Source of the DNA: Trichoplax adhaerens
Lineage: Eukaryota; Animalia; Placozoa
Reading direction: 5' to 3'
Length of the DNA: 64,000 nt
Assembly: GCF_000150275.1 (NCBI RefSeq)
Contig: NW_002060946.1
Location: 5,866,597-5,930,596, forward strand
Position 1 is the stretch's first letter. Each line of letters opens with the position of its first letter. The translations under genes and the position numbers were made by a program. The notes under the pieces are model-generated. The model saw only the letters and a program-made list of their open reading frames with translations. It had not been told where the DNA came from and searched no databases. Positions 12,919-50,046 of this stretch are shown piece after piece.

Positions 12919-15900
12919 TCATATTTGACTATTAGGATTTGCAATACCCATATGCTGACAATCCAGGTCAAACTCCGAATTAAAGACAAAATCTACAAAA
13001 GCAATGAAATACTCTTGTGTTAACGCTATAGCTTATCCAATGCCTTGAAATAGATCGCAAATCAGGATGATATAAGCAGAAAAAATTGTGGTGCTCCACG
13101 CAAGATTTTTACCTTCCCAAAGCTAATGATAATCTTACCTCTAGAGGTCGATATCACGCCACTACGATATCTTGAGGTAGCCTAAATTCGATATTAAAGT
13201 CCATAAATGCAATAAATCAATAAAAATGTTTATTAAAAGCAAAAAAATTTATACCATAAGGTGAACGAGATAGCCTCATTGCTACTACGCTTGCCACGAA
13301 CGAGTTACTTAGCATATTCTACTATAGTGAAATAACCCAATAATAAAATACGTCAAATACACTGTAAAATAGAAATTCTACTTACACTGCTTCCAAAGTG
13401 CTGATGCTTAGGTAATAAATTCTTTAAGAATCGGCCGATCAAGTTAGGACGAAATTTTCTCTCTCGGAAATTAACGCTGATCTAGAAGATAATATGTCGA
13501 GTAAGATCATATTTAGATGGCAACCAAAGACCATAATTTTGCAGTCTAGATAAGTGTAAATCGTATTGTAATCATTACCTATGGCGTGAAACTGATTTTT
13601 ATAGGTCAATGCGAAATGTTGTAAGATTACGATAATCTATTGCAAGTCTTATCAAGCTATAATGGTATGATTTTACTGTATATCCCAAAAATCTAGTATG
13701 TATAGTAGGCTAATTTCGTACTCTTTATACACACTTTCATTCTATATTAAAATGGATTTAATTACCATAGTCAAACTGAACGACTAGAATATTATCTACT
13801 GTCGACTGCATCCTACGGTAATAGTTTTATATTTTTAATATACCCAACATCAAAATACAATTTTTTACTCACACTAGGCTATAACAGAATGCAATAATTT
13901 TTCTGTGTCAAAGTAGATCTTAATAAATCACAATATTACCGTCTCAATCTACTGTAGGGCACCGTGCAGAATTTTTATTTTATGTCAAAGTACTTTTATT
14001 AATGACTATAATGTTAGTGATCAATCAAGTTGTAATGGTTTCGTTCTGGGCTAATATAGTTTTGGTTTGAGTAGCTATAGACATCTATTAATTTATCACC
14101 AAGGTAGATTACACCAAACTGCTATTAAGTTTATTCAATGCCATAGTCAATACTAAACTACCATATTCTTAGATATCGTGCACAAAAGTAAGTTTACGGG
14201 CATGGAGAATAAAGCATTGTATCATTTGATCTACCGTAGAATAGATCAAGCTGTAACAACTTAATTCTATGCCAAAATTAAATGGTGATATTTTATTAAG
14301 TACGATAAAGAATACAACCTGACGATCAAGGACACCATGAAAGAGAAAGACTTGGAATCCTTGTAGAGAGACCAAAATAGTGAAAATATAGTCTGCTACT
14401 TGATCGTTCTTAATCGGAAGAAAAAGTGCGGGAAACCAACAAAGTCCCAACAATGGCAAAAGAAGTATCGCATTACGAAGATCTCTGCATAGAAAGAGAA
14501 AAACAAATTTAAAATTCCCTTTTCATTTTTCTCACAATTATAGATCGATTGAATTTTATCATGTAAGTCGTTTCTATTATTCCAGCATATATTTAAAAAT
14601 AGAATAAAAAGAGTAATAATTGTAATTCCGAGCAATTGTAAAAATCCAGCTTAGAAAACAACCTGATAGAGAGCCATTGACTAAAACAATAAAATTTTTA
14701 TCATTTATACAACATAATCTCACTTAAAAGTGGTCAAAGTAATCGGTTGAAGTTGTCGTGAAAGTCGAGGAAGGTGTGCTTGATGAGATTGAAAATTTGT
14801 GGCACTGGCATATCTTTCTGATTCTTGTCTGCGAGCTAGTGAGTTATGCATTTTGTATATAGCACTTGATAGGATCGTCAGATTAATCTACGAAGCAATG
14901 CAACATGAAGTAAAATGAAATTGTTAGAAGGGAAATAAAAAATCAGATATTGAAATAGTTTAACAGTAAAACAGTAAAATGTTGATTCAGAAACTTTTAA
15001 TAAACTGCGAATCATATGAAGCACAACCACAGTAATTAATCTAACATCTTATATTACCAATAGAATAATAGCCAAAGGAGTGAGAAATAGCCAGATATAA
15101 GTAGAAGGTAACCAACACCTGTTATATTGGTACAAAAAATGACCAATCAATGTCTTTTATTGCATTCATTAATATCAGTCATTTTTCACGTCGCAATGAA
15201 AAACTATAAATTATGTTTAATAAACCAAACTACGAAATATCATCGATATAATTAATCGATTTATTTTACTTACACTTGCCCGCTTGGGGTATCTAAATAG
15301 GCCATAGGCCAAGCAAAATATGTTACAACGCATATTCCAGCTGGAAGAGCTATAAAGAAAGAGCATCATATCAACTCATAATTGACATTTAAAGGTAGAG
15401 TACACTTTTAGCCTTTGAGAATGTGGAAATTGTCAACTCTTCAAAGGTCTATGGTTGTGAAATAGCATGGAAACAAATCAAAGTCTATACTTACACCTAC
15501 AACACATTAGAAATCATATGAAATAAAACGCAATCTAGGCAGTTCGACAAGCTTACGTAGCATATGTATGTTAGGATGAGTAGACACTGACACTATTTTA
15601 ATTCGGACAGTTGCTATCCATTGCAGTTAGTAATCAAACCTATACTTGTATTTACTCTCTTACCCCAACCGATGAAAAGGTAGCAGAGAAACATCCTTGC
15701 ATTACTCCAATCGTGAACTACCGTGCACAAATTATACCAAGAATTAAGTAATATCCTGAACATGGATTTCTTAGCTTCATCTCTATATCTAGTTAAGGTA
15801 ATTGTCTTTAAGTACAGACAAATTCCTTCACATAATTGCCAAGTAAATATGGTAGTAAAGAGATATTGTAACGTAAGAATGATTGATGAGCATCCATTCT

Positions 15901-18900
15901 ATCGATTAAAAATAAAATAAATTAATTCATTCCGAGTAGACCTTCAACGTATGAATCACAATAAGTCGTAGTAGACTAAGGAGGTAATTTGAGTATAGCC
16001 AAAAATAAATGGATACATTACTTTGAATATCCTATTTGCATATCACCTCATATTTTATATTCGTAGTGATTGTAAATGCTAGATAAGATGCTATAATAGC
16101 GCATAATAGATTAATGTTGATGAAGGCTTTTGGAAATAGGGAAATTCTGCGATATTAAATAATATAACATTACGACTACGAAAAAGAAGGAAGCTATAGC
16201 AAATTATATTATCATCATCATCGTAGGATAACCCATCGAATGGTTAATATTTATAATAATGAAGAATGGCCTATACTGGCGCATTGGTTACTTTATATGT
16301 GATACATACCTTAATCCTGCATATAGTACCATCATAATTAAAGATCCAAATAAAGACAAGCTAAATCCAACAATCCCAATGTAGAATAATACAATTTCAT
16401 CGCCGTCAGTCCCCTAAAGGTACAAATAGTCGAAATCATCAATTATCTACAGTATAATAAAGCTCTATTTTACTTTTTACAGTCAATTTACTTAACCTAT
16501 ATAATATCTCTCAATAATTCGAATAGTTAAAATTTTAATTTAGCTACAATTCTAGAGATCCAAATGGCTTTATATTTCTATTGTTATGAAAGTCAATTTT
16601 ATAGGTTATTAAAAAACAATAATATGGAAGCCGGCATTTTGCTTAATAGCTCGAAAGGAAAATAATGAAATACTTCTACACTAATATATAATTTCTTATG
16701 TGGTCACAGTAGATAATAGATGAAGCAGAGAGTAGCCATTAATAATTCTATGATGTATCAGTGTCAAATTACAAAGAATTATAGCGTCTGGTTCGCACTT
16801 ATCCTAACAGTTTTAGTAGTGCAAGCATCATGTTAAGTACAGTACACATAGCGTACTTTATGGAATAATATCCTTGATATCCAATTTAGTTATTCGATGA
16901 TCGAATGGACATATTCCATTATTCGAATTAGAAGCAGGTTAAAGTAGTTTACTCGTAGATAATGTCATATAGGCATACAGTAAATTCTTTTTCTTCAATC
17001 AATATTTATAGTAAAAGTGAGGAATTACAGCTAACGAACAGTGGATTATTTCCTACTCGACAGTGTTTATAACAGAGTGAAAGAGGACCGAGAAAATAAC
17101 AAGTTGATTGTACGTGCGTGCATAGATCACTGGATGCTTTATCTGTAAAGTATCCAGTGGTCCTTTACAATGCTATATGTCTCTTTTCTGCTGATATTTT
17201 TAAAAGGAAGATAGAACTTACTTTGAGCATAATTTATAGTCAGTCCAGAAAAAATAGTAATAAGCCTTGAAGAGGTAAATTGAACATACTTTTCTCTAAC
17301 ACTTACAACATAATCGAAAGAAACAAGGGCAGATAGTAAATTATTTTCTTTTGCATATATTATTGATAGCAAAACCATAATTCTCAACCAACATACACGT
17401 ATATTTAAGCTCTGCCTGGTAGTATGAAGGCTGATCAAGGGATAACAGAAAACTGATATTAAAGACATTCCCTAAATGTTTATAACCTATCCATGGAGTA
17501 TTAATAAGTAGAAGGTGAACTATCACAGTACATACATCCTATAACCATATTTAAAACGTAGAATAACTATTGAAGTATAAATAGGACTTAATATGAACGT
17601 GATCGGTATCATAAATTGCCGGTACTCTACAGAAACAACTATAGCAAAACCAAGGAATAATGTCAGAGAATAGTCAATTACTTTCTTTACGTAAGTTTTC
17701 ATAGTTTTCGGATATAATGAACACTACAATTATTGCTTACGTTGCCGGTACCAGTTCCTAAAACGTTTATACTCGAGTTATAAGTTATAGTGTCATTTTT
17801 ACTTGCAGGCGGAACAGCAGCTCCAATCTCAACACAACTATTGTTGTATTGATGAAGTTCATTTAAGATTAGTAGACTATAATTTCGTGAGGTATAATTA
17901 AATTGAGATGCAGGTCCTAATAGTCGTTCAGTCGTTAATTGCCCAATAGATAAAACTGCGAGATGATAAAATGCTTGAGATAGCCAATTATGCTGCATTT
18001 TCTAAATAATAAACGAGGCTTTATTACAGGATAGCAAAATTCCTACACCATATTATCAATCTAAAATGGCCAATGTCAGCAAAAGAGTTGTGGTGTGATA
18101 TCATGCCCGTTAATATGACAGCAATTACCTGGATTGGACAAGTTGTTCCAGTATGGCTAATGTCTTGCTGTAAAATAGCTGCTGAAGTTCTAAGTAAGCA
18201 CTATATGTAAATATAGACGTAGTATAAAAATATTTGACTAGACTTACGAAGAAGATTAAAGTTCACTTCCATTTGGGTCAATATCAGTCGATCGGATTTT
18301 GTCTCAATTTAAGATTTAGAAATACTTAAAACAATATTTTAACGGCACTCACATTTGTGAGATTCCCATATCCTTCAGTATCATTCGTCTCCTTTCTAGC
18401 TAATGTAATATCATAAATAATTTGTAGAGATGTAATAGTTAAATTCTTTCCTGGAGTGTCTCCCTGGTGCTCATGGAGGAAGCTTGCCATGACATTAAGG
18501 TAATTTATGGAGTAATTCTTAGCATACGAACGGGTTAGCTGTTTATCAAATTTTATAAAATAATTGCATCTATTAGTAAAAACTCTTAGATCCAGAGAAG
18601 TTGAATTAAAATTTTACTACTAATATTAAATTACCCTCTCCTGAACTTCAGCAACAAGTACGGAGAAACAGTGACAAGTATAAGTAGGTGACCATTGATA
18701 TGTGTTACGATGGGCTAACCTGCACAATCTGCTAACATCGCCTAATAGAACGGCCATAAGTATAAGTATATATATGGCATAGATAGCATAAGTAGCACAG
18801 GCAATGAAGACAGTTAGCTAAAATAAACGAAATAAAATCATACAAACCATTTACAGTAGAATCGAAATATTGGCTACATTCAGCTATAGCTGTATGATTG

Positions 18901-21900
18901 GGATAAGTTTCTCTCCAGATAATTGTATTACTTCCAACTTGTTCTAGATTAAGCTTACAATTTGCTGCTTCTGAAAAATTGACATTGTCAGGTACATTTA
19001 CGAAATAACTGATAATTAATTGAAGGCTAGGTATTATCCTAAAACTGAAAATGAATAGATAACGGCCAAATTAGCTCATATTACCGTTCTGTAATTCTGG
19101 ACAGCCCTCACTATCTACATTTAGACCAGTCTGACAGCATAATAATGGCCTTCCATTTAGGTAATTAGATGTTTCATTTTTAATCATTGATAAAGTAATT
19201 TTATCCTATTTCGAGTTCAAGTAATGAATTATGTTATTAATTATTATTATTTTTCCTCAAAATTCAGGTTGCTTTTTCTTATATAAAAATGAAGCCACAA
19301 AAATTTTACCAATAAACTTAAAACGAACCTGTTGATCGCAAAATGGATAAGTTGATGTTTCATCAATTATTTCCAGTGCACACTTTATAAATTCAAGAAT
19401 TAATAATATTGCATAAGATTAGCATGAGGTATATGCCATTAAAATTAATACCATCAAGTACTTATATCCATACTATGAGAAATTAATATGACTTATAGAC
19501 ACTTTTACGCGTATTGTAATGCTACAAATCAAGATGTTGTTAGTTTATTGATAATATACATACGCTTGCTATTAAGTCTAACATGTCAACGTCCTTAAAA
19601 TTTTTATTTAAGTGCTGAAAAGCAACTTCTAAGCCATCCGTAAAGTACTTAGAATTAATGTTCAAGTTAATTCCTATCCTTGGCAGTTTCCGTAGAAATT
19701 GAACCGTTGCTATATGTAGTTTTTGCAGGTGATCGATCAATGTAGCGAGCGATGTACTGGACTGATTCTATATGAACAAGAAAGATGTTTTATTAAGTTC
19801 ATTATTCCAGATGGGCAGTTGAAAAAGAATGATTAAAAAGAGCTAGTTTAATTGATATTGAAGTTGTTGCTTAAATCTTGTCTTCCGATACTTGGTTAAA
19901 ATGTATATATATATAACTTTAAGCTATTTCTAATGGAGTCTATTGCGTAATAAGAACATAATTACTTTTACCTTTAAGGCATTAACGAAATGAACAATTT
20001 TCCTGCTTCGGCAATCGCAAATGTTTAACTCATGAGGATTCAGAACACATTTTTTCGTACACTTAACAGAGGTAATTCCTTCGATATCTATAGCAGAATA
20101 GAGATTTCAATGAATGTTCCATATAGTGGCAATAAATTCTAGATATTAGTATTTATTCGTAAGATCCGGCACATTAATAGTATTTGTTGCGTTATTCTAT
20201 TCTATAAATAATAACTAGTTCTTGCTACAGAAGATATATCATAATCAAAATATATATAAAACGGATTATGTCTTATCTTTAAATGCACGACACTTATTAG
20301 ATAGATATAATATACGCGTATATCTATGCCATACCATTTCGTATAGTGGAAAAATTCTGTAGTCGATTACAATTTCTATTCAATATTTTTAAAGATGGTG
20401 AAGATGGCGTCATTAATAGATTAAAGTGTACTCCAGCGATGTGGCTATCACAGAAGCAAAATCCAGGTGGCAGGCCTATATGAACATTTAAGAAGTAATA
20501 TACAATGAAAGGAAACTTAAACTTTAAGAGATCAAGCATGTACCAATTAATTATAGTATTATGCATACTTGTATAAGCAAACCCTATGTGCATGCGGTAA
20601 TAGGTACCGTAAAGGTTGATAAATTAAAAGAATGCGTTTAATCTTGACTACAATTTTAATCTTTAGACTAAATAATGCCATTTTCTATATAAATGATCTT
20701 ATGAAGCCGAGATCAACCCGATTTAAACCGCAAATTGCTTAATGTCTTAATTCAGAGTCGTATACGTGGTCTAGTGGCTTTAATTTATTTATGATATTTC
20801 TGTCACAGGGCAAGTAGTAACAATTTGCTCTGTAACCTAACCTTGAATTTAACTAGAGGGGCAGCATAAACGCTTAATTTCTATCGCCGTGTTTATTAAT
20901 TTTCGAAAAGCTATTTGAAATTATAATGCAGAGCAGTAAACTCTATGAAATAGTTATCAATTAATTAATCAGTCTGAGAAGTTATTTTATGAGCTGATCC
21001 TTTCATCGATATATAGAATACTTAATATCAAGTAATTGTTGGAAGCGAAAATTATTAATATGATTTTTGGTCTAGATATTAGTCAAAACGGGTTTGTTAA
21101 TTTATATTGCAGCGTGTAAATATAAGCACAGCAAGCTCAGTCTAGCCTCAAGCTAATTTTTTTACTGGCGTTATTTGATAAGAAACAAAAGTAGTCGCAA
21201 TAAAGTCAATAGTCTGAGACAATGTGAAATATTCTATTCAGAGCAATATGGTAAGTTAGTTGCTGTATATGTTCTAGCAATGAGCGTCATAAGGTATAGA
21301 GTAAATAAAATAACTTAAAGGTCAACTTTGCCGCATAGACGGGTACATAGGGAATTTAACCTACTTTCATTTAATTAATAAGATTATATCGTCAAGAATT
21401 AAAATAAATGAAATAAAAGATTGATGTGCATTGTTGCTATTTCATCTAATATTTCCTTAACTACGGATAAAAGTATGCTATATGCCGAAAATCAGCTATA
21501 ATTAAGGTTACATTTTAATCATAGTGATCATTCTTTACCAATCTTGTCATATTATTCAATACTGTTGTTGACACATAATAAAGTAGTATTATTAAATTAC
21601 CCTAAGATAGGATGATTAAAATTTAGAGATATTTTATATAGTATAGAGTATAACAGATGTAATATTTAAAGGAATTAAAGACATGTACACGAATTTTGAT
21701 GTGATTGCTCAGGTTTCAAGACAATCCCACCTTGTTATTTTAACTAAACAGTGATTCATATCCTCAATATGTTCCAATACATTAAATATTGTAATTAGCA
21801 TCTTTATTAACAAGTATATAGCTCAGTTGATACTATAAACTGCAGTTCAGCTCAGGAAGGCTGTCGTGAGCTGATAAATTATTGACATTTATATATAATG

Positions 21901-27908: not shown

Positions 27909-30900
27909 TTAATGGAGCTGATTAGTGCTTTCAGTTCCACTATCACTGCTAGTTTCATTTGGTATAGAAGTAGATTTATCCGACACGCTATAAGCCTCGG
28001 CATCATGACTTTCAATACCGTTGTTTTGATTAGTCTTAATAATGTTAAATTCCATAGAATCAGGAGCAGAAACTTCATCATCTTTGCCCGAAGTTGCATA
28101 GTAAGGGTTAACAATTCCTTTCGAGAGTGGTTTACTATCAGTTTTGGAATAAAATGAGGAGTGTGGAGTAGATCCTAGATTGATGAATTATGGAAAAACT
28201 TGTATTACACTTCATTTCCAGTATAGATTTACTCTCAATGTTGAGATTATTCTACCATAAAAATAGGATCAATGCGAAATTGCATACAAAGAAATTCTCA
28301 CTACGTAGTAAATGCCTGCTAGCTTAAATATTACTTATAATAAAATTTGAATGTGTAATTGTAATGATTTACACTAATATCTATCAAAAATTTCTAACCA
28401 GTTCAGAAAGCAAATTACAGCTTAAGTAAGAGAGATTACATAAAAATAACGTTAACAAGTTTCAACAATTGCGTCACTATCCAATATTCTTGTCACAGCT
28501 TTCACCAACCTGCTTTACTCGATATATGAGATTGCACGGATGTGACCACTTAATATAGAATAAAAAAGCAATAGAAATGAGTTAACAAAATCAGATACGT
28601 TACTTGCACATCAAAATAACGACTGCTTATTTTCATACTAGTTTCTTTCATGTTAATTTAACTCAATATTAGATATTATTATCTACATAACGAATACTTC
28701 AATTTCATTTAGAGACACATATAAATGATAGGTTACCATATAGAAAATGTTGCATAAACGTAATGCTAAACTAATAAGATATCATTTTAGTTAATTTTCG
28801 ATATCCTTTAGTAATAGTTAGCGCAATAATGCAGCATAAACGGAAAATTATATCAATGCATGATTATAGTATACTATCAGAGACATCAGCATCACTACTG
28901 CATTAGCACTCTACAGTATACAGAATTTTTAATGAGCATAAAAATCACTTAATCAATCAGTATATTGGTAATTATCACGTCGATTAAGAAGCGAATTACC
29001 TGTATTCCGGAATGTTGAACTAGCATAGCCATTTCTGGAATAAAATCCTGATGTACTATTTTCTCTCTTATCTTGCCATAACTAATAAATCATTTCAAAG
29101 TTTCAGTTGTTACAGGATGTAATGTATTGATTGAATATTGTTAGATAATTCAAGGATAAATATTTATGTGTTCTTGCAGTTAAGAATACGAGAGATTAAG
29201 AAAATTTGATTACAGTTATCTTTAGTGGACACTGAATATAGGACTAGCGCTAAATGCAAAATATTATTAGATATACAATAGATCTTGACCTTATCTTGGC
29301 TATATCGGAATTTCCTTTTACGAAAGGCGTCAATAATCTATGATAAAATTTAAAAAATATAATTCAATGTTACTACGTGCTAACAAAATCTGAAATTATT
29401 GTTGCTTATCGGTTATATTTTCTAGACTAAACTATGTGATCTCAATTTACCTGCTTATCCATAACGCAATGAAATATAAATAATTCGAATCCTTGCAGTG
29501 AAACAAAGATCGTAAAGAGGTAGTTAGCTACCACATCTGACTCAATTTGTACAAAGAAAGCAACGATCCAGCAAAGTCCAAGCAAAGGAAGTAGACAGAC
29601 TGCATTGCGAATATCGGTCCTACCGGAAGGTAGTAGATGTTAATAATGGTAGATGATTTCATATGTATGATTCAAGGAAATTAGGATTGACAACAAAGTA
29701 TAAGCAGTAAGTATTAAGTAACATTGTGCTACTAGGTGCAGGTTCTAACTTTATAGTTCTTTCCTAGTAACATGATTAAACTGTCTGGTATGTAAGCTGC
29801 TTCACGATTAATTTAAATTTTAACAATATTTTAATACCTAATAGCTTGATTCCTGTTACGGCCTTGGTTCATACGCAAAGCAATTCTGCGCCGTAAGACA
29901 TAAAGAATGATTCCGAATATTATTACGTTAACCTGCAATTACAGAATTATATTCGTTCAGGTTAAGAACTTAAGATCAAAGTGGTAGCGAAGCTATCGAT
30001 CTTAGATTTGTTTTTGCGAATATAAACGTAATTCATACCACTAGAATAGCAGCTAGAGGACCTAAAAATATCCATATATGGGTAACCGGTAACCAGCATC
30101 TAGGCGTAGCCAAATAATCTGATTTTAGATGTATTCATAACAAGGTGATACCATAGTGCTCACAGTTTACATTTAGTACATAATTTAAAATCTTCGACAT
30201 CTTATAAATGCTTACATAACGTTATAAGAATAAGCATCTGGCACAACTGCGAAAGTCATTCCACAGATTACTGCTGGAGTACCTGAATATAGTGGAATAT
30301 AATAATTATTTATAGTTTACGGTAATTAGTTTATACATGTAATAGTTATATGGCCAAATTATCGAAATATTTTATTACTTTAATCAATAGCTTGATTCAT
30401 TCATTAGATTTTAAAATATAATGAAATTGCTACAAACGGTCAATGAAATCTAAATTTACTGATGGTAAATTAATACAAACTGCAATATAATTTCTCAGCC
30501 TGTTTGAGAGTATTAAAATAATTAGACAATTCTTTTAACAGAGATCAAAAGTAGCATTTTATAAACTTTAAGCAGTGAAAGAAACCTAAAATAGCTTAAG
30601 TAAATATGGTCTACAACTGTTAGATTTATTTCAAGTAAAGAAGCGGTAGACATGGATAATTTTTATAATTTTGTAAAAAGATTTAAATACCCCAGCCTAT
30701 AAACATATACAGCAGCAAGTAAATTTTCTCTTCTCCAGTAAACACAGTGACCAAAATACGGTAGAGATGGATTCCTTCCACCAGCTGCCATGTAAAGACA
30801 CAGGTAAATAAGTACTGTAATATTACTGTAATTGCAGTACACCAGCCCTACAAATAGTTAATTACAGTCATATTTCAGCCATATCAATATTCAAAAAAAT

Positions 30901-33900: not shown

Positions 33901-36900
33901 ACAACATATCTATAGACTGAAGAATATAATTGATTGCAGCCAGTAAAAATAGTAATGCAACGCTCCGATAGCGTTGCATTCTTACCTAAAGTAACTTTAC
34001 ATTCACCATAACTCTGTACCTCTCCAGTTTGACAGCATAGTTTTGGCCTAGGACCTAGATAATTCTTGATTGAAGTCTCAATATCTTGTAAAATACTTTT
34101 ATCCTATTCAGATTACATGAGTAATATTATAATATGTAAGCTGAACCAAGGATTAAAATTGAGTACGACATAAGTCATGCATTTATTTCATGTAAGATTG
34201 TACTCTATTGAGATACTGACAGTACCTGATCATTACAAGACGAACGAGAAGAAAGAATTTGGCGAATGTCTAAGATGCACTGAAATAAATTGACCGATAA
34301 TAAAAGCCTCAGTAATTGTATGACTCTGTTTGGATAATAGAAACATATCTGTAGAGTTAGCTGAATAGACAAAATAATCCCCTAATCAATAAATACATAC
34401 ACCAGCTAGCAGATCATTAGTTTCATCTATTTCCGAGCTTTCATTTAATCGGTTATGTGCTATTTGCAACCCAACTAGTGCTTGCGCGATGTTAATTTTT
34501 TCGTTGTACATAGTCTCTGGTGATGTGTCGACAAATTCAAAGCTATTCTTTAGTAACTGACGCAAATTCTCGATAAAAACCGGCATAGCTGCATCTTTCG
34601 TATCCTATGATTGATATGTTAAGTAAATTGTAGCCTTTTAATATACTTGTATATGCAGATCCAGGCTTGTAATTGAATCAGTAGTATTTACCGTTCATTT
34701 GGTCTCAGAAGTTTAATTAAAATTTTTGTTGACTCTGATTAACAGCTATATCTAGTAATTCGCAAAATTTGTAAGCAAATTTACCGTTAAATTCTTGACC
34801 GATTGCAAAACTTTGATGCTTTGACAAAGGCAAATATTGAACGAAGCTGGATCAGCATAGTACAAAGCAGTTGGGCGTAAATTACATGTATATGTTGCTC
34901 TGCCTTCAATCTCTATATATTAAAATCAAGCAGACTAATGATTAACTGATCATATCGGCAATAGTAGTAATTGCAAAAGATTACTCCTCAATCATTACAA
35001 TATTTATAATATATATCAAAACTTATCAACGTGCAGTAAATTAAGCAACATTAAAATCCTTATTTGACATACAATACACTGATCATGAGACCACTGGAAC
35101 GCTATTCGTACTAATATTACGGACCTAATGTAGTAATAGTCAAGCTATTGCTTAATTACAATCCCAATTTTTACTGATATAAAGGTGTTTTAATTCCTGA
35201 ACCTATACAACTGAAAAAATTATTAGCAGCAGTTTATTAATGATGTAGATGCTATCATTTACCTGCATTATCGTATACTGCTCGATTGCTAATACAGTAT
35301 GAAATCTAGCTCTGATATACAAAGTAGTTACACTCGATAATCATAAGTAGAATAATCATAAAATCCGATCTTAAATTCTAGCGCAAGTATACCGTAATTT
35401 TGGGAAAATTTCGTAAGTACTGTAAAATTAATTAAAGCTGAAAAGGTTATTACTTAATTAAGTTGAACGAGCTCACGTGGCTCTAGGTTACTAAAATTAT
35501 GTCCATTTATAATGTATTAACCTATACTGACGATAGAAGATCGTCCGTATTTGAGTCGTACGTAGTAAATAACAAGAATAAGCCTGGCATTAAGCTCGTA
35601 ATTTTAATTTTATGCTACAGATCTCAGCACGTGACACAAGGTTTAAACTTGTGATTTAATGTTGAGCTAGTAAAATCTTACCTGAATGACTTATTGTGGA
35701 GTAGTTTTTGAATTTATCACAAGCCTCTGATTGTACTACACTCTTCGGCATATTGTCTGGTGGTTTCCCAAATGATTGAGTTACGGGTTTTTTTATACAT
35801 ATACCAGCTATTTCGCCTCCACAAATCCTTGGAAAATTTCGACAAGTAATACCTTCAGCTGGAGCATTTCAAGAAAAAAATCTAATCTTATTTGGTAATA
35901 TTGACATACATAATTTTATCATTGATTTTGTTCTTAACATCTAACGTGATTAGAAGCAGCCATAAACCCTAATAAAGTTTACATTTACAGCATCATTTCA
36001 ATAAAGATATTGGGAGTAATGTAACTTAACGAGTCTATTACTACAGCTCTTGTATGACTAAATGTCCCTTATTAAGGGCAAAGTTACCATTCATAAGCAT
36101 TATGCATAGAATTTATTATCACTATAAACGTTATAATTTTATTTATCGATTTCCCAGTAAGTCCGTTTCAAGAATTCATCAAATTTGCGAACGATCTCAA
36201 AGGGGATATTTGATGTTCGCTCAGTAACGCTGAAATTTTAGTTATACGCGGTAACTATCGGTAATATATAATTTTTACAACTGTATATGACAGTAAAAGT
36301 CATATTTTCTACGATATGATAACGGCGCTAAATTTAATTCGCTATTAATTGTAAAGTATGATCGAAAATCAATCGTAGGTAGATTGCTGCATTGCTTTGA
36401 GATCGGTTGATATGGTTATACATCTGGTTATATCTCGGTAGATATTAAATTTGTCGGAAAAAGAATTCGTTTTGCTTATTCTGCTTTCTTAGCTATCTTG
36501 TTTCTTTAATGTGCATTCGCATTAAGATATCATGAAATTGTAGATGTAGACACTACAGATTTATGAAAAGTGTCTTTAATAGTAATTTTTTCATTATAAG
36601 GATGAAAATCAGGCGCAATCAATGAATTCAATAAACGTCAATATTCAGTAATCATTTCAATAAAACGGATGCTGATCAATTTTACCGAAAGTATTCTATA
36701 AAGCGTACGTGCATATGCGGCAGTATGGGGACCTATACTTTGCTAGAGGATTGTCTTTGATATTATAAAGAATTTGTTCATTTCTCTTGAAAATAATATA
36801 GGTAATTATCGGTACTTACAATTCAAAGGAGAAATAATTGCTAGATCTAAGACAGACAGGCGTGCGTGGTATAATATCATAAAAGTGGCAATGAAAATTT

Positions 36901-37371
36901 CGTCGATATGTTATTAGGTACGGAAGATATTTTACGGGATAGCTTTAGGAAATAAGGTCCAGAATTACGTATTATAGATATTCAAAATCTCAAAAATTAA
37001 TCCATTTATAGAAAGTAGCGATTTTGAATTACTTCCGGTTTACTAATTCTGTAGCTAGTGGCTATGAAGCAAGCACAATGCGATTGCGATGTCTAAGTGC
37101 GCGTATATACAAAAATGGCGGCTATGAAATCTTTTACAAATTTCGTACTGCTTTATAGGAATAGAACACTAGTTAGGCACGTTCTTATAAAGTAAGTCAG
37201 AGAAAGTAGAATAAAGAACTAAGAGGAGACATAAGTTAACAAGAGAAGAATATTTTATAATGTTACATCGGTATTAAGCAAGCTATGGTTATTTAAAATT
37301 TATAACTTTATTGAAATACCTGTTATTGATGATAAAGCAATAATAATACAACAGGTTAATAACAATTTCAT
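27909..37371 (-). CDS. Class-B/adhesion-type 7TM receptor, paralog B (same architecture as A)
   Basis: Signal exon 37371-37320 (MKLLLTCCIIIALSSIT); micro-exon ~36847-36820; ~35858-35682; ~34911-34785; ~34604-34402; ~34280-34226; ~34103-33986. HRM exons ~33619-33503 (IIWPALPPG..KCNAYF) and ~33421-33315 (RSC..QWSGIDTCNCYS); ~32855-32670; ~32586-32517; ~32313-32053. Stalk+TM1 ~31414-31249; TM2 ~31137-31034 (WFIHVNL); TM3-4 ~30848-30691 (WQLVEGIHLY..FIGWG); ~30282-30217; ~30098-30039 (CWLP); ~29932-29838; TM6-7 ~29619-29451. Tail exons ~29336-29290, ~29081-29000 and 28174-27909. Confidence 0.87.
33775..33849. repeat. 24-bp inverted repeat with a 27-nt loop inside an intron of paralog B
   Basis: taacaagctgaggggtacaatctt (33775-33798) and aagattatacccctcagcttgtta (33826-33849). 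The single mismatch is a U-G wobble on the minus (sense) strand. Confidence 0.9.
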
Positions 37372-42491: not shown

Positions 42492-45400
42492 CTACTGATA
42501 CTGGCCACTGTCTGGCGAAGTTGATAATGTATCAATACAATCTCGATTGAAAATACCATCACAACTGGGAAAAGAAATTTTTTTGCACGATGGCTTCTCG
42601 GATGAAGATTCTAAATAAAAAATGGGACGTTAACCGAAAATTAAATCTAATTTAATATCAGTGCATTTTATGATATATAAGCTAACATCAAAAAGAAAAA
42701 TAAACATTTCAGAAATTTTATTCTATCCCTATTTCATCGCTATAACCTGTATCTTCCGGCCAATTATTACATTCTATTGATCCTTTACCACTTTCTATTG
42801 ATATTGAGTCAACACAATTTTGATCAATAGTACCGCCACAGCCTCGAGTAGGAGCTTTACGACGTAAAGACTGCCCCGATGATGACACTAAATAGAAAAT
42901 AGAGTAGTAGCAAGACATTTTAACCGTGATAATTAAAATATTGTGGGTGATCGCTTATACTAAATGCAATGTTGGCTCAGTACTAAATAGTAAAGGCTAC
43001 TGCTGCTATGATTCATTTTAAATGAATGCAATAAAGTTTCAATTAAACTTGCCAGAATATGGTTTATTAAATGATGTCGTAGTGTGATCTGTAATCGAAT
43101 CAAAAGCATTAACATATATTTTCATTTTCATCTGTCAATAGTAGCTAGGAAAATGATGAGTGTGTTTATGTCACAGCAAAACTACGATGTAACGAATTAA
43201 TAGGCTTTGTTACTCATAGTAATGGAAAATCGTAAACTATGGCCTAGATATACTATCCCAATAAGCAATCCAAGACTTTCTACTGCATAAATTACAGTTT
43301 AAAAAGATTTCAATCTTCATGGTACCTGTCTGAACTTTACCAGAGTTACAGTGTAATGTATTTCCTTGACTATAGGAGTTAAGACATAGTTGGACTTGTG
43401 ATCTTGACTATAGCATTGAAAGAAAGTCAAAACTTGTAATAAAATCGTACTACAATAAATAATAACAAATCATTTCGCCATATCAGTAGGATAAGTTATA
43501 CTACAAAATTGCAATGTTTATGGTCATAATTTCAAGAATGATTATCATAAACTTTATCATAAATCTAGCGAAGGAAAGCATTGACTCAACTACAGCATGC
43601 ACCTGCGCTCTAGCAGGGCGCCATCGAAAATTCCGTCTTTTTATAGCTGCTATCACCTAATTATAAGGATATTGACACGAAATTTTTCGTTTAATACATT
43701 TAAAGTGTAAACAAGCAGTTAGAATCAGGACATGTTTATTAAATAGTAGCTGAAAATTAACCTGTTTATCCAATAGGCAATGGAATAGGAATAGTACAAA
43801 CCCTTGCATTGAAATTGATATGGTGAACAAATAGTCAGCTACGTAATCCCCTGGTATAGGAACGAATAAGCCAACAATCCAGCACAATCCTAGCAATGGT
43901 AAGAGTGCTATAGCATTTCGAATATCAGTCCTACAATGCAAATAGTAAAACCGATCCTTACTCCTAGTTGAAAAGCTAATTATTGGTATTAATAGATGTA
44001 TGTCTATATCTTTTAGTAAATATGATGAAAATTATAACGATTACAACTTTAGAAATGAATTATTATTGCTTATAGATTTGTTACTATAGTTAATATGAAG
44101 ACACCCTAAACTGCCTCTTAGTATGGTTGTTGCAATACTATATCTATTCGGAGATTGGTAAACCAGAAAATGCTTCTACCTTAGTGATTTGCGATTGCTT
44201 TCGGAAGCTTTTTTTACTCCATCAGACATTCTATGAGTTAGGATATATAGTGTTATTCCAAATATGATGATATTAGTCTGTAAAAGAACGCATCTTTCGT
44301 AAGCGCTAGCAAGTTCCGAAATTGGAAATACTTGCTATGTATAATCAAAAAATTATCAATCGTAATCTTCAAACGCATTCTCTCGTCGGAAGCAGTTATG
44401 TTTTATAGTCTTTCGACGTGCTATCTTTAAGATATCTTAATTATTGATGTCTTCTATTATTCCACCTACTAAGGTTATGACGGTTAATGGAGCAAGGAAT
44501 ACCCAAATAAATGAGGAGCGTATCCAACAACTATCAATAATAAAAATAATTTACCATAGTATTAAAGTATTGCATATATTTTAATCGATAGTAAGAATAC
44601 GGTGAATATTACAAATTATTTCTATTCATACATACGCTGTATTATTTGTATAAGCTTGAGGAAAAGCAGCAATGCTTATGCCACTGACTACAGCTGGAGT
44701 TCCTAAAATTGCGGATTATATAATTATATCAAGTTTCCACTGCTATCTATACTAGTATTGGCTTGATATCATTTTTAGTCTTCATCTAATTTTACCGATA
44801 TCTTAAAACATTTTATTGCAAAAGTAATATTTCAAAATTTTATACTGCTTCAAAAGCACGAAAAATTAATCTCGATTGATATCTTTAATGAAAATAATTT
44901 TCCGTAAATCCTTTCCCAAAGTTGAGCCTTTTAGCTTAATTTTTCTTTGTTTTATTGCTAATAGACTATCAATTGTGCTTTACTCTAACCAATCATACTC
45001 ACCCCAACCAATCGCCAGGAATAGATAAATATGCCATCTTCTTTCAATTATAAAGACTGTTACCAAAACACGATATAAGTGAATGCCCTCTACGAGCTGC
45101 CATGTGAAAATGCTAGTGAAGAAGAATTGTAGCATTACAGTAATGGCAGTACACCAACCCTAATCCGTAAGAGAAATAATCTTGTAAGTATATTCAGCGT
45201 GCAATTGCTGTAGTGTGATTTACAGCTAACAATTAAATTGTTTATCAAAGTGAAAAATTTAATGAATACAATAACGAATTTGAAAAGCGTTGTTCATACC
45301 TTGAATATAAAGTATATCAATTATTTATAGAAATATTATTTTACATTTAATATTGTAATCACTCGTAATTATCTTAGTATTAATTTTACGTAAACTTATA

Positions 45401-48400
45401 ATATTGTTATATTTTCCGTTATGACTAAGGTGATGTATCATTTCGAATTTATTTCGTCTTGTGGCTCTTGTCTGATATCTGAATCAATTTCGAAATTCAA
45501 TACTTGCTTAGTCTATTCTAAATCTGAGTGCTTGTTACGGAGCCAAGCTCCGAAATAATAAAGGCCTTGTTAATTAAAATATCTAATATAAATTGTTGTT
45601 TGTTCCAGTAGTCTAATAAGCGTTAATGAATACTTATTTATTGATAAGATTAATGTCTAAGTAATTGAATACTAATACCTAAGTGTAACGTGTAATTTGT
45701 GCTGAGCCTTGAGGCTCTAATTGGCACAAATAAATTTATTGTTGTTAATTAGCGTTAAGTTATACTGATTTATGTTAACTTCTTCTATCTAAATTCCTAT
45801 ACTGTAAGTCGCTATGTCTAAGATACTAACATATGCACCATCGGCGGAGACCCAGACTATATAAACTCGAGCACTAAATTAGCTCTTCAGTTCCATTTTA
45901 ATCATTTTTAGGTCCACTTGATCATCATTACAAGGAGTTTTCTAACGTACTTTTTACTAGATTCTTTTACTAGGATTTATCTCAATAAAGTAAAGTCCTT
46001 AAACCTATTACCCGTTGGCAGCTTATCTATGTAGTCGAGAGTTAATTCAACTACGATAAGTCGCCTAAATCGGCTGGGGGCACTAGTAGTCGCAACAACA
46101 GCGTTTAAGATCCGTTCAAAAAGGCAATTCGTAATAGTGCTAAATAATAATACCAAACTTGGATTACGGTATACGAGTATTAATGCATTTTACTATAGAT
46201 GTGCCTAAAATCGAATAATCTAACTGCCGTAGACAGACAGAGCACAATAGATTCTAAACATAAGCAGCTATACACAGTTACTGTTAAAAGCGAACTTAAT
46301 TCGTTTACTTTGGAACCAGAAGAGAACATGAACTTTAAACTTTAAAGTGAAAAAACTGGTAAAATGTCTACCAGTTGAGGTTATCGACAGCACTTACAAT
46401 CTTTAAATGTTATAATATGAATAACTAATCAAATTTCGCCAACTAACCTTATCTGCAGTCTGATTTATTAATGCCATAAATCCGACATTAGAAAATACGA
46501 TAGCAATAATTAAATTGATGTGGATAAACCATTTGCGCGATTTAGGTAACCTATAACATTCATGAATTGAAGAAGACTTTTGCTACCACTATTATACTTA
46601 AAAAGCACACAATAAGATAATTTAAATGACTCAGTTACGCTAATTTCAGTAGCAGTCAAGCCAAGTGTTAACATAAGTATCACCTTATTAAGCAAAACGT
46701 AGAGATTTTATTATATTTCACCAACAGAGCGTTTACAGCTTACCTTAGAATTATAAAGGCTAACAAAGTCACAATTAATCCAATCGCTGAAAGGCTTAGA
46801 CCAATATAGCTTATTATAGACAGTATACGACTGTGCAATAGCCTTACTCTAAACATCGGATCAACAGTGCTGTTAACAATGATAGTTTCGTTACTAGCAA
46901 TGGTAGTTTCATTACTACCATTAATTTGTATTGGATTATATTGAATAACATGAATAACAGGGGGTGGAAGAGGTTGAAAGGGTGACGGTTGCTCCTATAG
47001 TTGAAGATAATTAAAGTAGCAAAAGGACTAACAAATAAATCCATCGTGCTAAATGAATATCGAAACGTTTAATAAATTACAGTACAATTATAAAGTTTTA
47101 AAGTTAATTAAACTTCTTTTAGGCTGCTATGGTTACTTAGAGATGTTTCTTTTAATAGCTAATTGTATAATTATTAATCCTTACATCAGAACCGGTAACT
47201 AAAACCGTCAAATCGCCCGGTCCTACTGGTTGCGGATTTACCATATCTTGATAGCTATCGTGTATCCCTGGTATTGTTATTATAATTGTAATAGGAGGTA
47301 GAGGTACTACTATCCCAACATGTGTGCAGCCAGATTGGTACCAACTCAACTCATAAGAAATTAATTTACTCATATTCGCCTGATATGTAAAATTTTCCCA
47401 AGTTCCTAGGAATGAGTTGGTAGCCTCTTCTCCGAAGACATTATATGTTAGCTGGTAAAAGACATTGGATAAGGTAACTTGTTGTCCTTCCTAACCCGAT
47501 AAGATGTGTCTTAATGTTAGGTTATACTTGCAAATAGTTCATCGTATAGAATTTTTTATACCCCATCATGATATTGCAATAGCAAATCGACGTATTCTCA
47601 ACGTCGATGCAAACTAATTTATCCATTAGAATCAACTTACATGAATAGGACAGTGAGTAGACGTCGTTTCTAACTGCTGTAGTATATCGGTCGCAGTTCG
47701 AAGTAAACACTACAGTTGAAGAGCAATTATGTCGAACGATCGAAATAACGTACATATGTATACTGTCAATAATCATTAATGAAAAATATATAATAAAGTA
47801 ACAATAATAATTATAGTTCTAAACTAGAATCGAACAAAAACTAAATCAGTAATAGTATATTTACGTTATCTAGATTCTGATATTCCAAAGGATAATTGGT
47901 AACGTTACGCTCTTGCCGGATGGTATATATTAAGTTAAGCGTGTCAATAGTTAATTGCTTTCCAGCCACGTCGCCTTGATTTTTATGAAGAAAACTAGCC
48001 ATCTGAATCAAGTACGAAGGTGGATAATCTTTGCTTTTTATCGTGATCATCTGTTACCAACACACGATCGAGATATAAACGAATTATTAATATTTTGATT
48101 ACTTCTCAGTATTACTGTTTACACTTAAGTTTTTCGTCGCATGTACCCGTTCGTAAACTATTGAAACAATTTCTGAATAGCAATGGCAGTCACTAACTGG
48201 CGACCATATAGAAGAATTCGTTAATGTTGATTGGCACCACCGATACAAATCACCTAAATACGGAAATATATCAAGACAGACTTAGATATCCAATTTTCCT
48301 CTTTAAGAATACCAGATAACTGATATTCCACGGCAGTTGGATCAAAATTGAACTACCTTTGACTTTATCCAAACCATAATATTGACTGCATTTAGAAAGC

Positions 48401-50046
48401 TGAATACTAGAACCAGGAGTAGTTCGCGGCCATAAAATCAAATGCTCAATCTTAGGTTGACAGGCTTCAAAATCTGCTCCAGTCATTTTATTAAAAGAAT
48501 CGCCATTAAACAGTAGATTGGCATTTAAAATAGATGTTCAATTTTATTTTATTACTATAGGTAGATTGATAACTTATTTACAAAAAATCGTAAGCACAAA
48601 TTTTTCGTCAACATTTTCATTACCCAACGAATCTGGGCATACTGCATTGTTTGCTAATTCCCCAGTTTGACAACAAACTAATGATTCGCTTTGTAGACCA
48701 GATGCGGTTATATTCATTAGTATCTGTAACTGATCCATATCCTGATTGTATCATTAAACAGTATTAGCATCATTTGCATTATAAAATATTACATTGCAAC
48801 GACAATCCATAGCTGAATAGCGAAAAATTTCATCAAAATTTAAATCTAACCGTTTGATTACAGGATATGTAAGAGGACACCTTTCGTATGATTTCTATAA
48901 CACACTGTTAGCAATATTATATCATTAGATATTATTAAGTTGGAAACATACCCAATACACATTAAGCTGAATAGGGCACTTAAATTTCAGACTAATTAGA
49001 ATGACAACTGTAAGAACGAACTTGCTGAATATTACCAGAAAAATTAAATGCTAAAATTCAAACTGATTATCTAAGCGTTCAATTAATAATTTCTTACGCT
49101 GAAAGCTAATAATTTCCTTGGATCTTCATCGGAAACACTAGTTAGTTTATCAGAGGCCGCTTGCAGACCAACTGCCAATTGACTCATGTTGATTTTCAAG
49201 CTGAAGCCGAGTAATGGAAGATGATCAATGAATTGAAAGATGGATGCATGCAATTTACGCAGTTCATCAGCCAGTGCAGCTGCTGAACCTACATCCGGCA
49301 TATCCTAAATAAGTAAATATGAATTTATGTGAAAGAATACTTATGAAAGCGTTACAAAATATACGGCAAAGTCAATTTGAAGATATTATCATCTTTTTAC
49401 TAGATTCTGCAACCATAGATCTAAGTTATGACTCATTCATAAAATCATTTTAGTACCTGGATATTATAAACAGATCTAGTGACATTTGAGTTTCGGCAAT
49501 CGCAAAGATCGAGATCATTTTGAGAAATTTGATAATTTTCTTTGCAATAAACACTTGCTATTCCTTCGATATCTTCAATCATACCGGAAAAACAATTTTT
49601 AAAGTTTAAAAATTGTCATATTGCAGATCTAACTATCATAACTCTAAACAATATGACCTTTCAACAACTAATAATATGCACAATCATAGATTTGGTATGA
49701 AGAAGCAAAGATTTAATTGAATATTATACGTAGATATTGTCGGTATATTGGCTTAGCTAATCTGATATAATAGTCTTAGGTAACCGAAAATAGTACTATT
49801 ACGAGTTTTCTCAGATCATTTTTATAGACTATCACGGTTTCTCCATTTTTACTGAATTCGATTTTTAGGACGCATGGTCTATCAGTTTACCTTGACTGAT
49901 GCTAGTAAAATTTTGTAAAGAAGAGCAAGACTTTTCTATCACAATCGGTAAAGATTCAAAAGGTGAAACAGATCCACGAAAGCAAGTACCAGCGATTATT
50001 TCTGTGCAATTCTCCGATTTGGGAAAGCAATCTTGACAATAAATAT
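42492..50046 (-). CDS. Class-B/adhesion-type 7TM receptor, paralog C (5' end not found, probably in or beyond the N-gap)
   Basis: Exons 50046-49891, ~49572-49458, ~49304-49098, ~48906-48851, ~48742-48624 (VCCQTG). HRM exons ~48489-48357 (ILWPRTTPG..KCSQYY) and ~48254-48148 (YRWC..IWSPVSDCHCYS); ~48051-47864; ~47709-47641; ~47490-47194. Stalk+TM1 ~46995-46744; TM2 ~46551-46448 (WFIHINL); TM3-4 ~45160-45003; ~44702-44636; ~44531-44467; ~44278-44180; TM6-7 ~43930-43762. Tail exons ~43656-43603, ~43407-43340, ~42887-42746 and 42610-42492. Confidence 0.85.

What the first reader, a model, noticed from the sequence alone, without database searches (positions are those of the whole stretch)
12919..50046. 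Tandem trio of adhesion-type 7TM receptors that lack the GPS/Stachel autoproteolysis motif
Seen: all three 7TMs are adhesion/class-B-like (IHxNL, WxLxEG, IGWGxP, CWL, LLPLLGLxW, SLQG). The sequence before TM1 is a Pro/Thr/Asn-rich stalk (B: TESPPVTDDNGNDTNTTSNRNPLEAHKYAL; C: EQPSPFQPLPPP...HSRIL; A: GTGTGN|GTDGDEIVL) with no C..W..W..GC..C.C.HL/T.F motif, and exon phases join cleanly without an extra exon. Established: canonical adhesion GPCRs carry a GAIN/GPS next to TM1, while secretin receptors have HRM + 7TM without GAIN and are thought to derive from adhesion GPCRs. Inference: a lineage-specific family architecturally between the two classes, which must be activated by something other than a cleaved tethered agonist, possibly secreted peptides.
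Basis: partly seen in the sequence, partly recalled or inferred. Interest (0 to 1): 0.8.

Follow-up and report, generated by a model that had tools for sequence, protein, structure and literature searches.

The report
GPS-less adhesion-type receptors in Trichoplax
Three neighbouring Trichoplax genes (part of a five-gene placozoan family) encode adhesion-class seven-helix receptors that have lost the self-cleaving GAIN/GPS module and its built-in agonist; this is a real, conserved but modest variant of a known receptor class.

Summary
The window is Trichoplax adhaerens scaffold DNA. It carries three minus-strand class-B 7TM genes: A is TRIADDRAFT_55869, B is TRIADDRAFT_55870, and C lies upstream.

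None has a GPS, GAIN beta-subdomain or Stachel:
- Pfam GPS and GAIN six-frame searches find nothing in the window.
- A GPS model built from 40 GPS exons of this genome finds nothing either.
- The exon before TM1 joins the TM1 exon in phase 0 in all three genes. In C the intron is only 190 nt.
- AlphaFold models show helices and a disordered stalk, with no beta sandwich.

The trio is part of a family of exactly five loci. A fourth tandem copy lies about 10 kb beyond the window and a fifth is on another scaffold. Orthologues in other placozoan-like contigs have the same architecture and dN/dS of 0.11-0.17.

The 7TM is clearly adhesion-type, closest to ADGRL, D and E, and not secretin-type. About 215 residues lie between the sub-threshold HRM-like domain and TM1: a family-specific helical domain plus a stalk. 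The "intermediate to secretin" reading is therefore only an architectural analogy, and peptide activation is untested.

This scan already reached the same conclusion for the neighbouring fourth gene. GPS-less adhesion receptors are known in sponges and as ADGRA1. Verdict: new variant of a known kind.

The parts
12922..20593 (-). Gene A (TRIADDRAFT_55869, XP_002112139; the public model P0003 is incomplete)
   Evidence: Exact mapping of P0003 onto the window. The missing TM2-TM5 exons were found by homology at 16035-16154, 15662-15898, 15055-15117 and ~14730-14887.
18635..18971 (-). A: two HRM-like Cys exons (18846-18971 and 18635-18739)
   Evidence: Pfam HRM on P0003 gives E 0.025, below the cut-off. 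hhalign to latrophilin-type HRM gives E 0.021.
18129..18538 (-). A: helical-domain exons (18353-18538, 'NYxxxYLxxMASFL'; 18129-18200, 'CLLxxxxxLxxxxxxxxxxCPIQ')
   Evidence: AF2 model of P0003: residues 286-432 are helical, pLDDT 80-95. The family-specific exon HMM A5 hits only five loci in the genome.
17741..18001 (-). A: exon before TM1, ending ...SCVEIGAAVPPASKNDTITYNSSINVLGTGTGN; no GPS
   Evidence: There is no Pfam hit at E<=10.
16414..17740 (-).
   Evidence: No segment of 10 aa or more in any frame scores above noise with the lineage GPS HMM. The splice sites are GTAAGC...TTTAG, phase 0.
14319..16413 (-). A: 7TM exons (TM1 16309-16413 ... TM6-7 14319-14483)
   Evidence: 7tm_2 hit at window 14349-14489. 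Homology to B, C and P0007.
27912..35868 (-). Gene B (TRIADDRAFT_55870, XP_002112140; the public model P0001 lacks the HRM-like exons and the first half of the TM3 exon)
33312..33611 (-). B: HRM-like exons (33498-33611 and 33312-33422). The intron falls at HRM profile position ~33-38, as in canonical HRM-GAIN genes of this genome.
   Evidence: Pfam HRM on the first exon gives E 0.11, profile positions 3-32. The genome-wide HRM exon hits break at profile positions 33-38. Compare 'GNLSRSC' here with 'GNVTRAC' in L050.
32053..32855 (-). B: helical-domain exons (32670-32855, 32517-32585) and the pre-TM1 exon (32053-32313)
31415..32052 (-).
   Evidence: Read directly. No GPS-like segment.
29451..31414 (-). 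B: stalk plus 7TM exons (TM1 31250-31414, TM2 31034-31138, TM3-4 30689-30847, 30218-30280, 30036-30098, TM5 29837-29929, TM6-7 29451-29618)
   Evidence: 7tm_2 hits. Mapping.
42700..50065 (-). Gene C (third paralogue). Its 5' end abuts an assembly gap at 50342-50665.
47185..48480 (-). C: HRM-like exons (48352-48480, 48141-48254), helical exon (47853-48053) and pre-TM1 exon (47185-47490)
46995..47184 (-). C: 190 nt intron between the pre-TM1 and TM1 exons, too short to hold a GPS exon
43759..46994 (-). C: stalk plus 7TM exons (TM1 ~46746-46994, TM2 46475-46552, TM3-4 45004-45159, 44455-44538, TM6-7 43759-43932)

Best explanation
These three genes belong to a placozoan-specific family of five class-B receptors. 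A, B, C and a fourth copy D lie in tandem; E is on another scaffold.

The seven-helix core is of the adhesion (B2) type. The ectodomain has no GAIN beta-subdomain, no GPS cleavage motif and no Stachel. From the N-terminus it reads:
- a first Cys-rich plus helical module;
- a 'CCQTG' Cys exon;
- a divergent HRM-like domain split over two exons;
- a family-specific helical domain of about 150 residues, ending in a conserved C-x-x-[IV]-G-x-x-V-P-P-x-x-x-N-D-T-I-L-Y-N segment;
- a 25-50 residue N-glycosylation- and Pro-rich stalk;
- TM1.

Shown here: the architecture, the absence of GPS, conservation under purifying selection, and the adhesion-type 7TM.

Inferred:
- The HRM-GAIN-7TM module is ancestral in holozoans, and most other 7tm_2 genes of this genome keep a canonical GPS exon. 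The family therefore most likely arose by secondary loss or replacement of the GAIN beta-subdomain.
- The proteins would be single-chain, uncleaved receptors.
- They would be switched by a ligand, or by an ectodomain-7TM contact, acting on the HRM-like/helical ectodomain and the retained orthosteric pocket (CW in ECL2, the TM6 Trp). Exposure of a tethered agonist would play no part.
For: Organism and gene identity.

7tm_2 hits.

Adhesion-type 7TM:
- The family profile hits ADGRL3/L2/D1/E5 at 3e-20 to 6e-17, but CRF1R only at 2e-9.
- Foldseek top hits are CD97, LPHN2/3 and ADGRL4 at 30-36% identity.
- The nearest non-placozoan proteins are GPS-bearing adhesion GPCRs.

No GPS or GAIN:
- Pfam and lineage-HMM searches.
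- Positive control: 52 canonical GPS exons elsewhere in the same genome.
- Clean phase-0 junctions and short introns.
- AF2 models show no beta sandwich. They show confident helices at 100-250 of P0007 and 286-432 of P0003, and a disordered stalk.

Family size:
- Exactly five loci match the exon HMMs.

Conservation:
- Orthologues of A, B and E occur in other placozoan-like contigs with the same junction.
- dN/dS is 0.11-0.17.

Spacing:
- HRM to 7TM is ~215 aa here, against 280-330 aa in canonical HRM-GAIN-7TM modules (PMC12716839).
Against:
- The HRM assignment is sub-threshold: 21.3 bits against a cut-off of 26.2. AF2 did not fold that region confidently.
- The alignments behind the AF2 models were shallow, about five paralogues plus fragments. 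A small or unusual beta domain in the 250-310 region of P0007 could therefore have been missed.
- Secondary loss is argued from parsimony. No rooted tree was made.
- Nothing here tests the activation mechanism.
Confidence: 0.8

Rival explanations
1. The family is a truncated-GAIN receptor. The helical domain after the HRM-like domain would be GAIN subdomain A, retained after deletion of subdomain B with its GPS and Stachel. This is a refinement of the best explanation, not an opponent of it.
For: - Position directly after HRM, as in HormR-GAIN receptors.
- Six to eight helices over about 150 residues.
- The spacing deficit of ~70-110 aa fits loss of part of subdomain B.
- The ESM Atlas feature search of P0007 residues 97-300 returns GAIN, 'GAIN subdomain A' and HRM clusters as its best named hits, at score 0.86. 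This is a lead only.
- A weak 'W..GC'-like remnant in C, 'SWYQSGC', scores 5 bits.
Against: - hhalign of the post-HRM region against an alignment of 17 GAIN regions gives probability 0.2%.
- hhalign of the first helical exon against 12 canonical GAIN-A first exons of the same genome scores no better than column shuffles: 81 of 200 shuffles reach the observed score.
- Pfam GAIN gives no hit at E<=10.
- The exon HMMs hit no GAIN exon in the genome.
- Fold searches gave only generic helical-bundle matches.
Confidence: 0.35
2. These are true secretin-type (B1) receptors, or direct evolutionary intermediates towards them, activated by secreted peptides through an HRM domain.
For: - HRM-like Cys domain, no GAIN/GPS and an uncleaved architecture.
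- Secretin receptors are thought to derive from adhesion GPCRs (PMC13197933; PMC4302439).
Against: - The 7TM is much closer to adhesion than to secretin receptors.
- A ~215 aa helical domain and stalk separate HRM from TM1, unlike the juxtamembrane ECD of B1 receptors.
- The ectodomain exons are restricted to placozoan-like sequence, so the family is a side branch.
- No peptide-receptor evidence exists.
Confidence: 0.1
3. A GPS exists but was missed: too divergent, in an alternative exon, or lost in an assembly error.
For: - The A and B introns before TM1 are 1.3 kb and 0.64 kb.
- The assembly has gaps (50342-50665).
- The public models are imperfect.
Against: - The lineage GPS HMM with filters off finds nothing in the whole window, in D, in E or in three foreign orthologous contigs.
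- In C the intron is 190 nt. In D, E and the foreign orthologous contigs L047 and L064, segment coordinates put it at roughly 130-340 nt.
- The junction is conserved and in phase in all copies.
Confidence: 0.04
4. One or more copies, A being the likeliest, are decaying pseudogenes left by tandem duplication.
For: - A has ININL instead of IHxNL, an extra insertion or intron in the TM3-4 exon, and a poor public model.
Against: - All recognisable exons of A, B and C are open.
- The A-type orthologue in another placozoan-like contig shares A's peculiarities and is also open.
- dN/dS for A against that orthologue is ~0.17.
Confidence: 0.05

Closest known systems
Canonical adhesion GPCRs with an HRM-GAIN-7TM module (latrophilin/ADGRL, ADGRD, CELSR, BAI)
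   Same: - 7tm_2 core most similar to ADGRL, D and E.
- An HRM-like Cys domain in the ectodomain, with the HRM intron in the same place as in canonical Trichoplax HRM-GAIN genes.
- Retained CW (ECL2) and TM6 Trp hallmarks.
   Different: - No GAIN beta-subdomain, GPS or Stachel.
- HRM-to-TM1 distance of ~215 aa instead of 280-330 aa.
- The intervening helical domain has no detectable sequence similarity to GAIN subdomain A.
GPS-less or GAIN-less adhesion GPCRs already on record: human ADGRA1/GPR123, and 12 of 40 Amphimedon adhesion GPCRs
   Same: Adhesion-type 7TM without a GPS (PMC11697300; PMC4302439).
   Different: - ADGRA1 and the sponge cases mostly have short or absent N-termini. Here there is a ~450-residue structured ectodomain with HRM-like and helical modules.
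- The family is conserved as several paralogue types across placozoan lineages.
Secretin-family (class B1) peptide hormone receptors
   Same: An uncleaved receptor with an HRM-type Cys domain and a 7tm_2 core.
   Different: - The 7TM is only distantly similar: E 1e-9 or worse, 21-26% identity.
- The HRM-like domain is not juxtamembrane.
- No ligand is known.
Other GAIN-less adhesion-like receptors noted in this genome by this scan (the 'SEA-7TM' pair, s1-778791), and about 15 other 7tm_2 loci without a nearby GPS hit
   Same: Same genome, and the same theme of GAIN loss or replacement.
   Different: - The ectodomain differs. No SEA or other Pfam hit on the pre-TM1 exons, and no beta structure in the AF2 models.
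- I did not examine those other loci.

Membership tests
Adhesion GPCR (class B2) | 7TM of the 7tm_2 type that groups with adhesion rather than secretin receptors | tested here: met
   - Pfam 7tm_2: 167 bits for P0007 and 116 bits for P0001.
- Profile against PDB: ADGRL3/L2/D1/E5 at 3e-20 to 6e-17, best secretin-family hit 2e-9.
- Foldseek: 30-36% against 21-26% identity.
- No phylogeny was made.
Adhesion GPCR (class B2) | GAIN domain with GPS motif (C-x-C-x-H-L-T/S) immediately before TM1 | tested here: not met
   Pfam GPS and GAIN, the lineage GPS HMM, exon junctions and AF2. Control: 52 GPS exons were detected elsewhere in the genome.
Adhesion GPCR (class B2) | Tethered agonist (Stachel, T-x-F-A-V-L-M) between the cleavage site and TM1 | tested here: not met
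   - The stalks are TESPPVTDDNGNDTNTTSNRNPLEAHKYAL (B), GTDGDEIVL (A) and EQPSPFQPLPPP...HSRIL (C).
- The GPS HMM includes the Stachel and gives no hit.
Adhesion GPCR (class B2) | Autoproteolysis into N- and C-terminal fragments | not testable with these tools
   This needs a western blot of tagged protein. The sequence predicts no cleavage.
Secretin family (class B1) | N-terminal HRM/ECD fold with three disulfides | tested here: inconclusive
   - Pfam HRM: 21.3 bits (E 3.5e-4) on P0007 and 15.4 bits on P0003, both below the 26.2-bit cut-off.
- hhalign to latrophilin-type HRM: E 0.021.
- AF2 pLDDT is 30-60 in this region.
- The intron position is shared with canonical HRM exons.
Secretin family (class B1) | ECD joined to TM1 by a short linker, with no intervening domain | tested here: not met
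   About 215 residues, including a confident ~150-residue helical domain, lie between HRM and the 7TM.
Secretin family (class B1) | 7TM groups with B1 receptors | tested here: not met
   by similarity ranking only; no tree was made.
Secretin family (class B1) | Activated by a secreted peptide hormone | not testable with these tools
   This needs a deorphanisation assay.
SEA-domain juxtamembrane module (as in ADGRF and mucins) | Alpha/beta SEA fold with a G|SVVV-type site before the membrane | tested here: not met
   - 'IGAVVPP' resembles the motif only superficially.
- No Pfam hit at E<=10 on the pre-TM1 exons.
- AF2 shows helices and coil, with no strands.

The most novel reading that the evidence does not exclude
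Placozoans would have made the adhesion-to-'secretin-like' transition independently. An HRM-GAIN-7TM receptor lost the GAIN beta-subdomain, GPS and tethered agonist but kept HRM plus a remodelled GAIN subdomain A. It now works as an uncleaved receptor for secreted placozoan peptides. That would make it a living structural intermediate showing how class B1 could arise from B2.
Probability: 0.12. Interest if true: 0.65.

Novelty: new variant of a known kind. Interest (0 to 1): 0.36.

Why it matters
Adhesion GPCRs are defined by the GAIN/GPS module and by tethered-agonist activation. A conserved family under purifying selection keeps an adhesion-type 7TM and a large structured ectodomain but has dropped that module. 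It shows that the 7TM core can be used without it.

The family also gives a natural system for two questions. One is how such receptors are switched. The other is whether the route from B2 to B1 (secretin) receptors, which is proposed only from phylogeny, has structural parallels.

It is not a new kind of system:
- GPS-less adhesion receptors are already reported in sponges and as human ADGRA1.
- About a third of the 7tm_2 loci in this genome lack a nearby GPS hit.
- The same scan already described the neighbouring fourth gene in the same terms.

On the practical side, the public models TRIADDRAFT_55869 and TRIADDRAFT_55870 are incomplete and could be corrected.

Tried and rejected
- **Hidden or divergent GPS exon.** Rejected. 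Pfam GPS, a GPS HMM built from 40 exons of this genome and run with filters off, and intron lengths all argue against it.
- **Pfam GAIN.** No hit at E<=10 in the window or on the exons.
- **Helical domain as GAIN subdomain A.** No support from two hhalign tests with shuffle controls. Only a sub-threshold ESM Atlas lead favours it. Left open.
- **SEA-like juxtamembrane domain.** Rejected.
- **Word-indexed homologue search with the P0007 ectodomain.** Found only itself.
- **Literature search by locus tags and accessions.** Found no paper.
- **Helical halves of the proposed internal duplication.** No detectable similarity: 47 of 100 shuffles reach the observed score. Only the Cys exon of module 1 resembles the second HRM exon (E 0.0016, 2 of 100 shuffles).
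- **7TM phylogeny.** Not made.
- **Joined exons.** Exons were searched by reference one at a time. Joined sequence came only from database gene models returned by the tools (P0001, P0003, P0007).
Full report
**What the DNA is**

The window is G000:C1411:5866597-5930596 of a 105.6 Mb, 1414-contig, ~31% GC assembly. A representative-protein search with the exon before TM1 of the middle gene returned a 99%-identical protein. The exact look-up names it TRIADDRAFT_55870 of Trichoplax adhaerens. The lower gene is TRIADDRAFT_55869. So this is placozoan nuclear DNA with short exons and AT-rich introns.

**Checking the observation**

Stop-free segments of the minus strand, and tblastn of the middle gene's segments against the window, show three paralogous genes with the same exon order and 35-73% identity per exon:
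- A at about 12922-20593.
- B at about 27912-35868.
- C at about 42700-50065.

Pfam 7tm_2 hits fall in all three. A has ININL rather than IHxNL.

The whole-genome six-frame search with Pfam GPS gives 52 hits, none inside the window. Pfam GAIN gives none there even at E<=10. By my comparison of the two hit lists, most of the other 7tm_2 loci have a GPS exon 0.2-2.5 kb upstream of TM1. GPS exons are therefore easy to see in this genome.

I fetched 40 of those GPS exons. They read W..GC......T.C.C.HLT[HN]FA[IV]L in a single exon. An HMM built from them scores its own members at 55-84 bits. On all 4267 stop-free segments of at least 10 aa from the six frames of the window it scores at most 8 bits.

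The exon before TM1 joins the TM1 exon with canonical GT...AG sites in phase 0 in all three genes:
- A: 17741|16413.
- B: 32053|31414.
- C: 47185|46994.

In C the intron is 190 nt, which leaves no room for another exon.

**The family is larger than a trio**

7tm_2 and P0007 searches of the genome show a fourth copy (D) about 10 kb beyond the window end on the same strand. A fifth (E) lies at C1403:1672726-1677095. HMMs of the two most characteristic ectodomain exons hit exactly these five loci in the genome at convincing scores (74-124 bits) and nothing else. D and E also lack any GPS-like segment. P0007, annotated 'ADGRL2' in Trichoplax sp. H2, is essentially identical to E.

In 1.84 billion representative proteins, the pre-TM1 exon has only placozoan or placozoan-like relatives, plus two spurious repeat hits. 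Three metagenome contigs of ~30% GC carry orthologues:
- A-type: L047.
- B-type: L064.
- E-type: L046.

L047 and L064 show the same GPS-less junction, with introns of roughly 250-340 nt by segment coordinates. L046 ends just after the pre-TM1 exon, before TM1. None of the three holds a GPS-like segment. Per-exon Nei-Gojobori counts give dN 0.23-0.32, a saturated dS of 1.7-2.2, and a ratio of 0.11-0.17, including for ectodomain exons. The genes are therefore old, split into types before those lineages diverged, and under purifying selection.

**What the ectodomain is**

Exons were searched one at a time by reference. Joined sequence came only from database models (P0001, P0003, P0007). P0001 and P0003 turned out to be incomplete when mapped back.

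Pfam finds only 7tm_2, plus a sub-threshold HRM: 21.3 bits on P0007 and 15.4 bits on P0003, against a cut-off of 26.2. The HRM-like domain is split by an intron at profile position ~33-38. Canonical HRM-GAIN genes of this genome are split at the same place, and the second exon starts GN[LV][ST]RxC in both.

AlphaFold2 ran on shallow alignments: five paralogues, fragments, and some distant adhesion GPCRs. It gives:
- For P0007: a confident helical domain at residues 100-250 (pLDDT 74-94), a disordered 253-309, and a good 7TM.
- For P0003 (gene A): helices at 79-196 and 286-432 (pLDDT 80-95), then the conserved C-x-x-[IV]-G-x-x-V-P-P-x-x-x-N-D-T-I-L-Y-N segment at ~433-455 (pLDDT ~80), then a disordered stalk and TM1.

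Neither model has a beta sandwich. The distance from HRM to the 7TM is ~215 residues, against 280-330 reported for HRM-GAIN-7TM modules (PMC12716839).

**Is the helical domain a remnant of GAIN subdomain A?**

Position and size fit. The ESM Atlas feature search of P0007 residues 97-300 returns GAIN, GAIN-subdomain-A and HRM clusters as its best named hits. The score is 0.86, which the tool itself rates as a lead only.

Against this:
- Profile-profile comparison with 17 GAIN regions gives probability 0.2%.
- Comparison of the first helical exon with 12 canonical GAIN-A first exons of the same genome is indistinguishable from column shuffles, 81 of 200.
- Fold searches with the gene A model gave only generic helical matches.

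I leave this open at about one in three.

**Which class the 7TM belongs to**

- The family profile hits ADGRL3, L2, D1 and E5 chains at 3e-20 to 6e-17. The best secretin-family chain, CRF1R, comes at 2e-9.
- Foldseek ranks CD97, LPHN2/3 and ADGRL4 first at 30-36% identity. GLP-1R, CRF2R and others follow at 21-26%.
- The nearest non-placozoan proteins are GPS-bearing adhesion GPCRs of echinoderms, molluscs and vertebrates.

The core is adhesion-type.

**How it most likely works**

Shown:
- An adhesion-type 7TM.
- A ~450-residue structured ectodomain.
- No GAIN beta-subdomain, GPS or Stachel.
- Purifying selection.

Inferred:
- The HRM-GAIN-7TM module is considered ancestral in holozoans (PMC12716839), and most Trichoplax 7tm_2 genes keep it. 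The family therefore most likely lost or replaced the beta-subdomain.
- The proteins should be uncleaved single chains.
- Activation must come from a ligand or an ectodomain-7TM contact rather than from an exposed tethered agonist.
- The conserved NDT sequon in the 'TILYN' segment suggests an exposed, glycosylated surface rather than a buried agonist strand.

Whether the ligand is a secreted peptide is untested.

**Comparison with what is known**

GPS-less adhesion receptors are on record:
- Human ADGRA1 has no GAIN (PMC11697300).
- 12 of 40 Amphimedon adhesion GPCRs lack a GPS (PMC4302439).

In this genome about 15 further 7tm_2 loci have no nearby GPS hit. This scan has also noted a GAIN-less 'SEA-7TM' pair elsewhere, which I did not check.

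The scan's follow-up on the neighbouring gene D (s1-766222) concluded 'adhesion-type family lacking GPS, uncommon variant of a known class'. My independent analysis, which included D, agrees.

Secretin receptors are thought to descend from adhesion GPCRs, probably the D subfamily (PMC13197933). This family resembles them only in being uncleaved and HRM-bearing. I found no paper naming these loci.

**Verdict**

This is a real, conserved, lineage-specific variant of the adhesion GPCR class. The 'between two classes' reading holds only as an architectural analogy. Interest is moderate.

Noticed in passing
window 55862-56884 (+): Intronless 340-aa ORF that looks like a rhodopsin-type (class A) GPCR: seven hydrophobic stretches, ERL in place of DRY, and NPVIY in TM7. 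It lies upstream of the class-B cluster.
   Followed up: no
window 50342-50665: Assembly gap of 324 N immediately upstream of the first recognisable exon of gene C. The signal-peptide exon of C may be missing or unplaced.
   Followed up: no
window 19972-20473, 34785-34913, 49469-50008; L042:8379-8829: The N-terminal module of the ectodomain contains a Cys exon (G-x-x-S-x-x-C...C-x-C-x-S) that aligns with the second HRM-like exon (hhalign E 0.0016; 2 of 100 column shuffles reach it). The helical exons of the two modules show no detectable similarity. The proposed internal duplication is therefore only weakly supported by sequence.
   Followed up: partly
window 30785-30847, 33312-33611 (B); 14730-16154 (A): The public models TRIADDRAFT_55870 and TRIADDRAFT_55869 are incomplete. 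B omits both HRM-like exons (it uses a wrong-frame exon at 33368-33418) and the first half of the TM3 exon. A omits TM2 to TM5.
   Followed up: yes
G000:C1398:431589-434906; C1405:1618213-1681329; C1401:28887-93675; C1409:4548190-4553176: Further 7tm_2 loci of this genome have no GPS hit nearby. One has an above-threshold HRM exon ~3 kb upstream (C1398), and there are two tandem clusters. GAIN/GPS loss seems common among Trichoplax class-B receptors.
   Followed up: no
L049 (G000:C1378:239000-243500): A canonical laminin-G/EGF/laminin-EGF-HRM-GAIN-GPS-7TM gene (CELSR/flamingo-like) with GAIN, GPS and TM1-3 in one 442-codon open frame. I used it as a positive control.
   Followed up: partly
window 15662-15898; L047:1086-1337: The A-type genes of both species share a ~23-codon in-frame insertion, or a small extra intron, inside the TM3-TM4 exon that B to E lack.
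   Followed up: no
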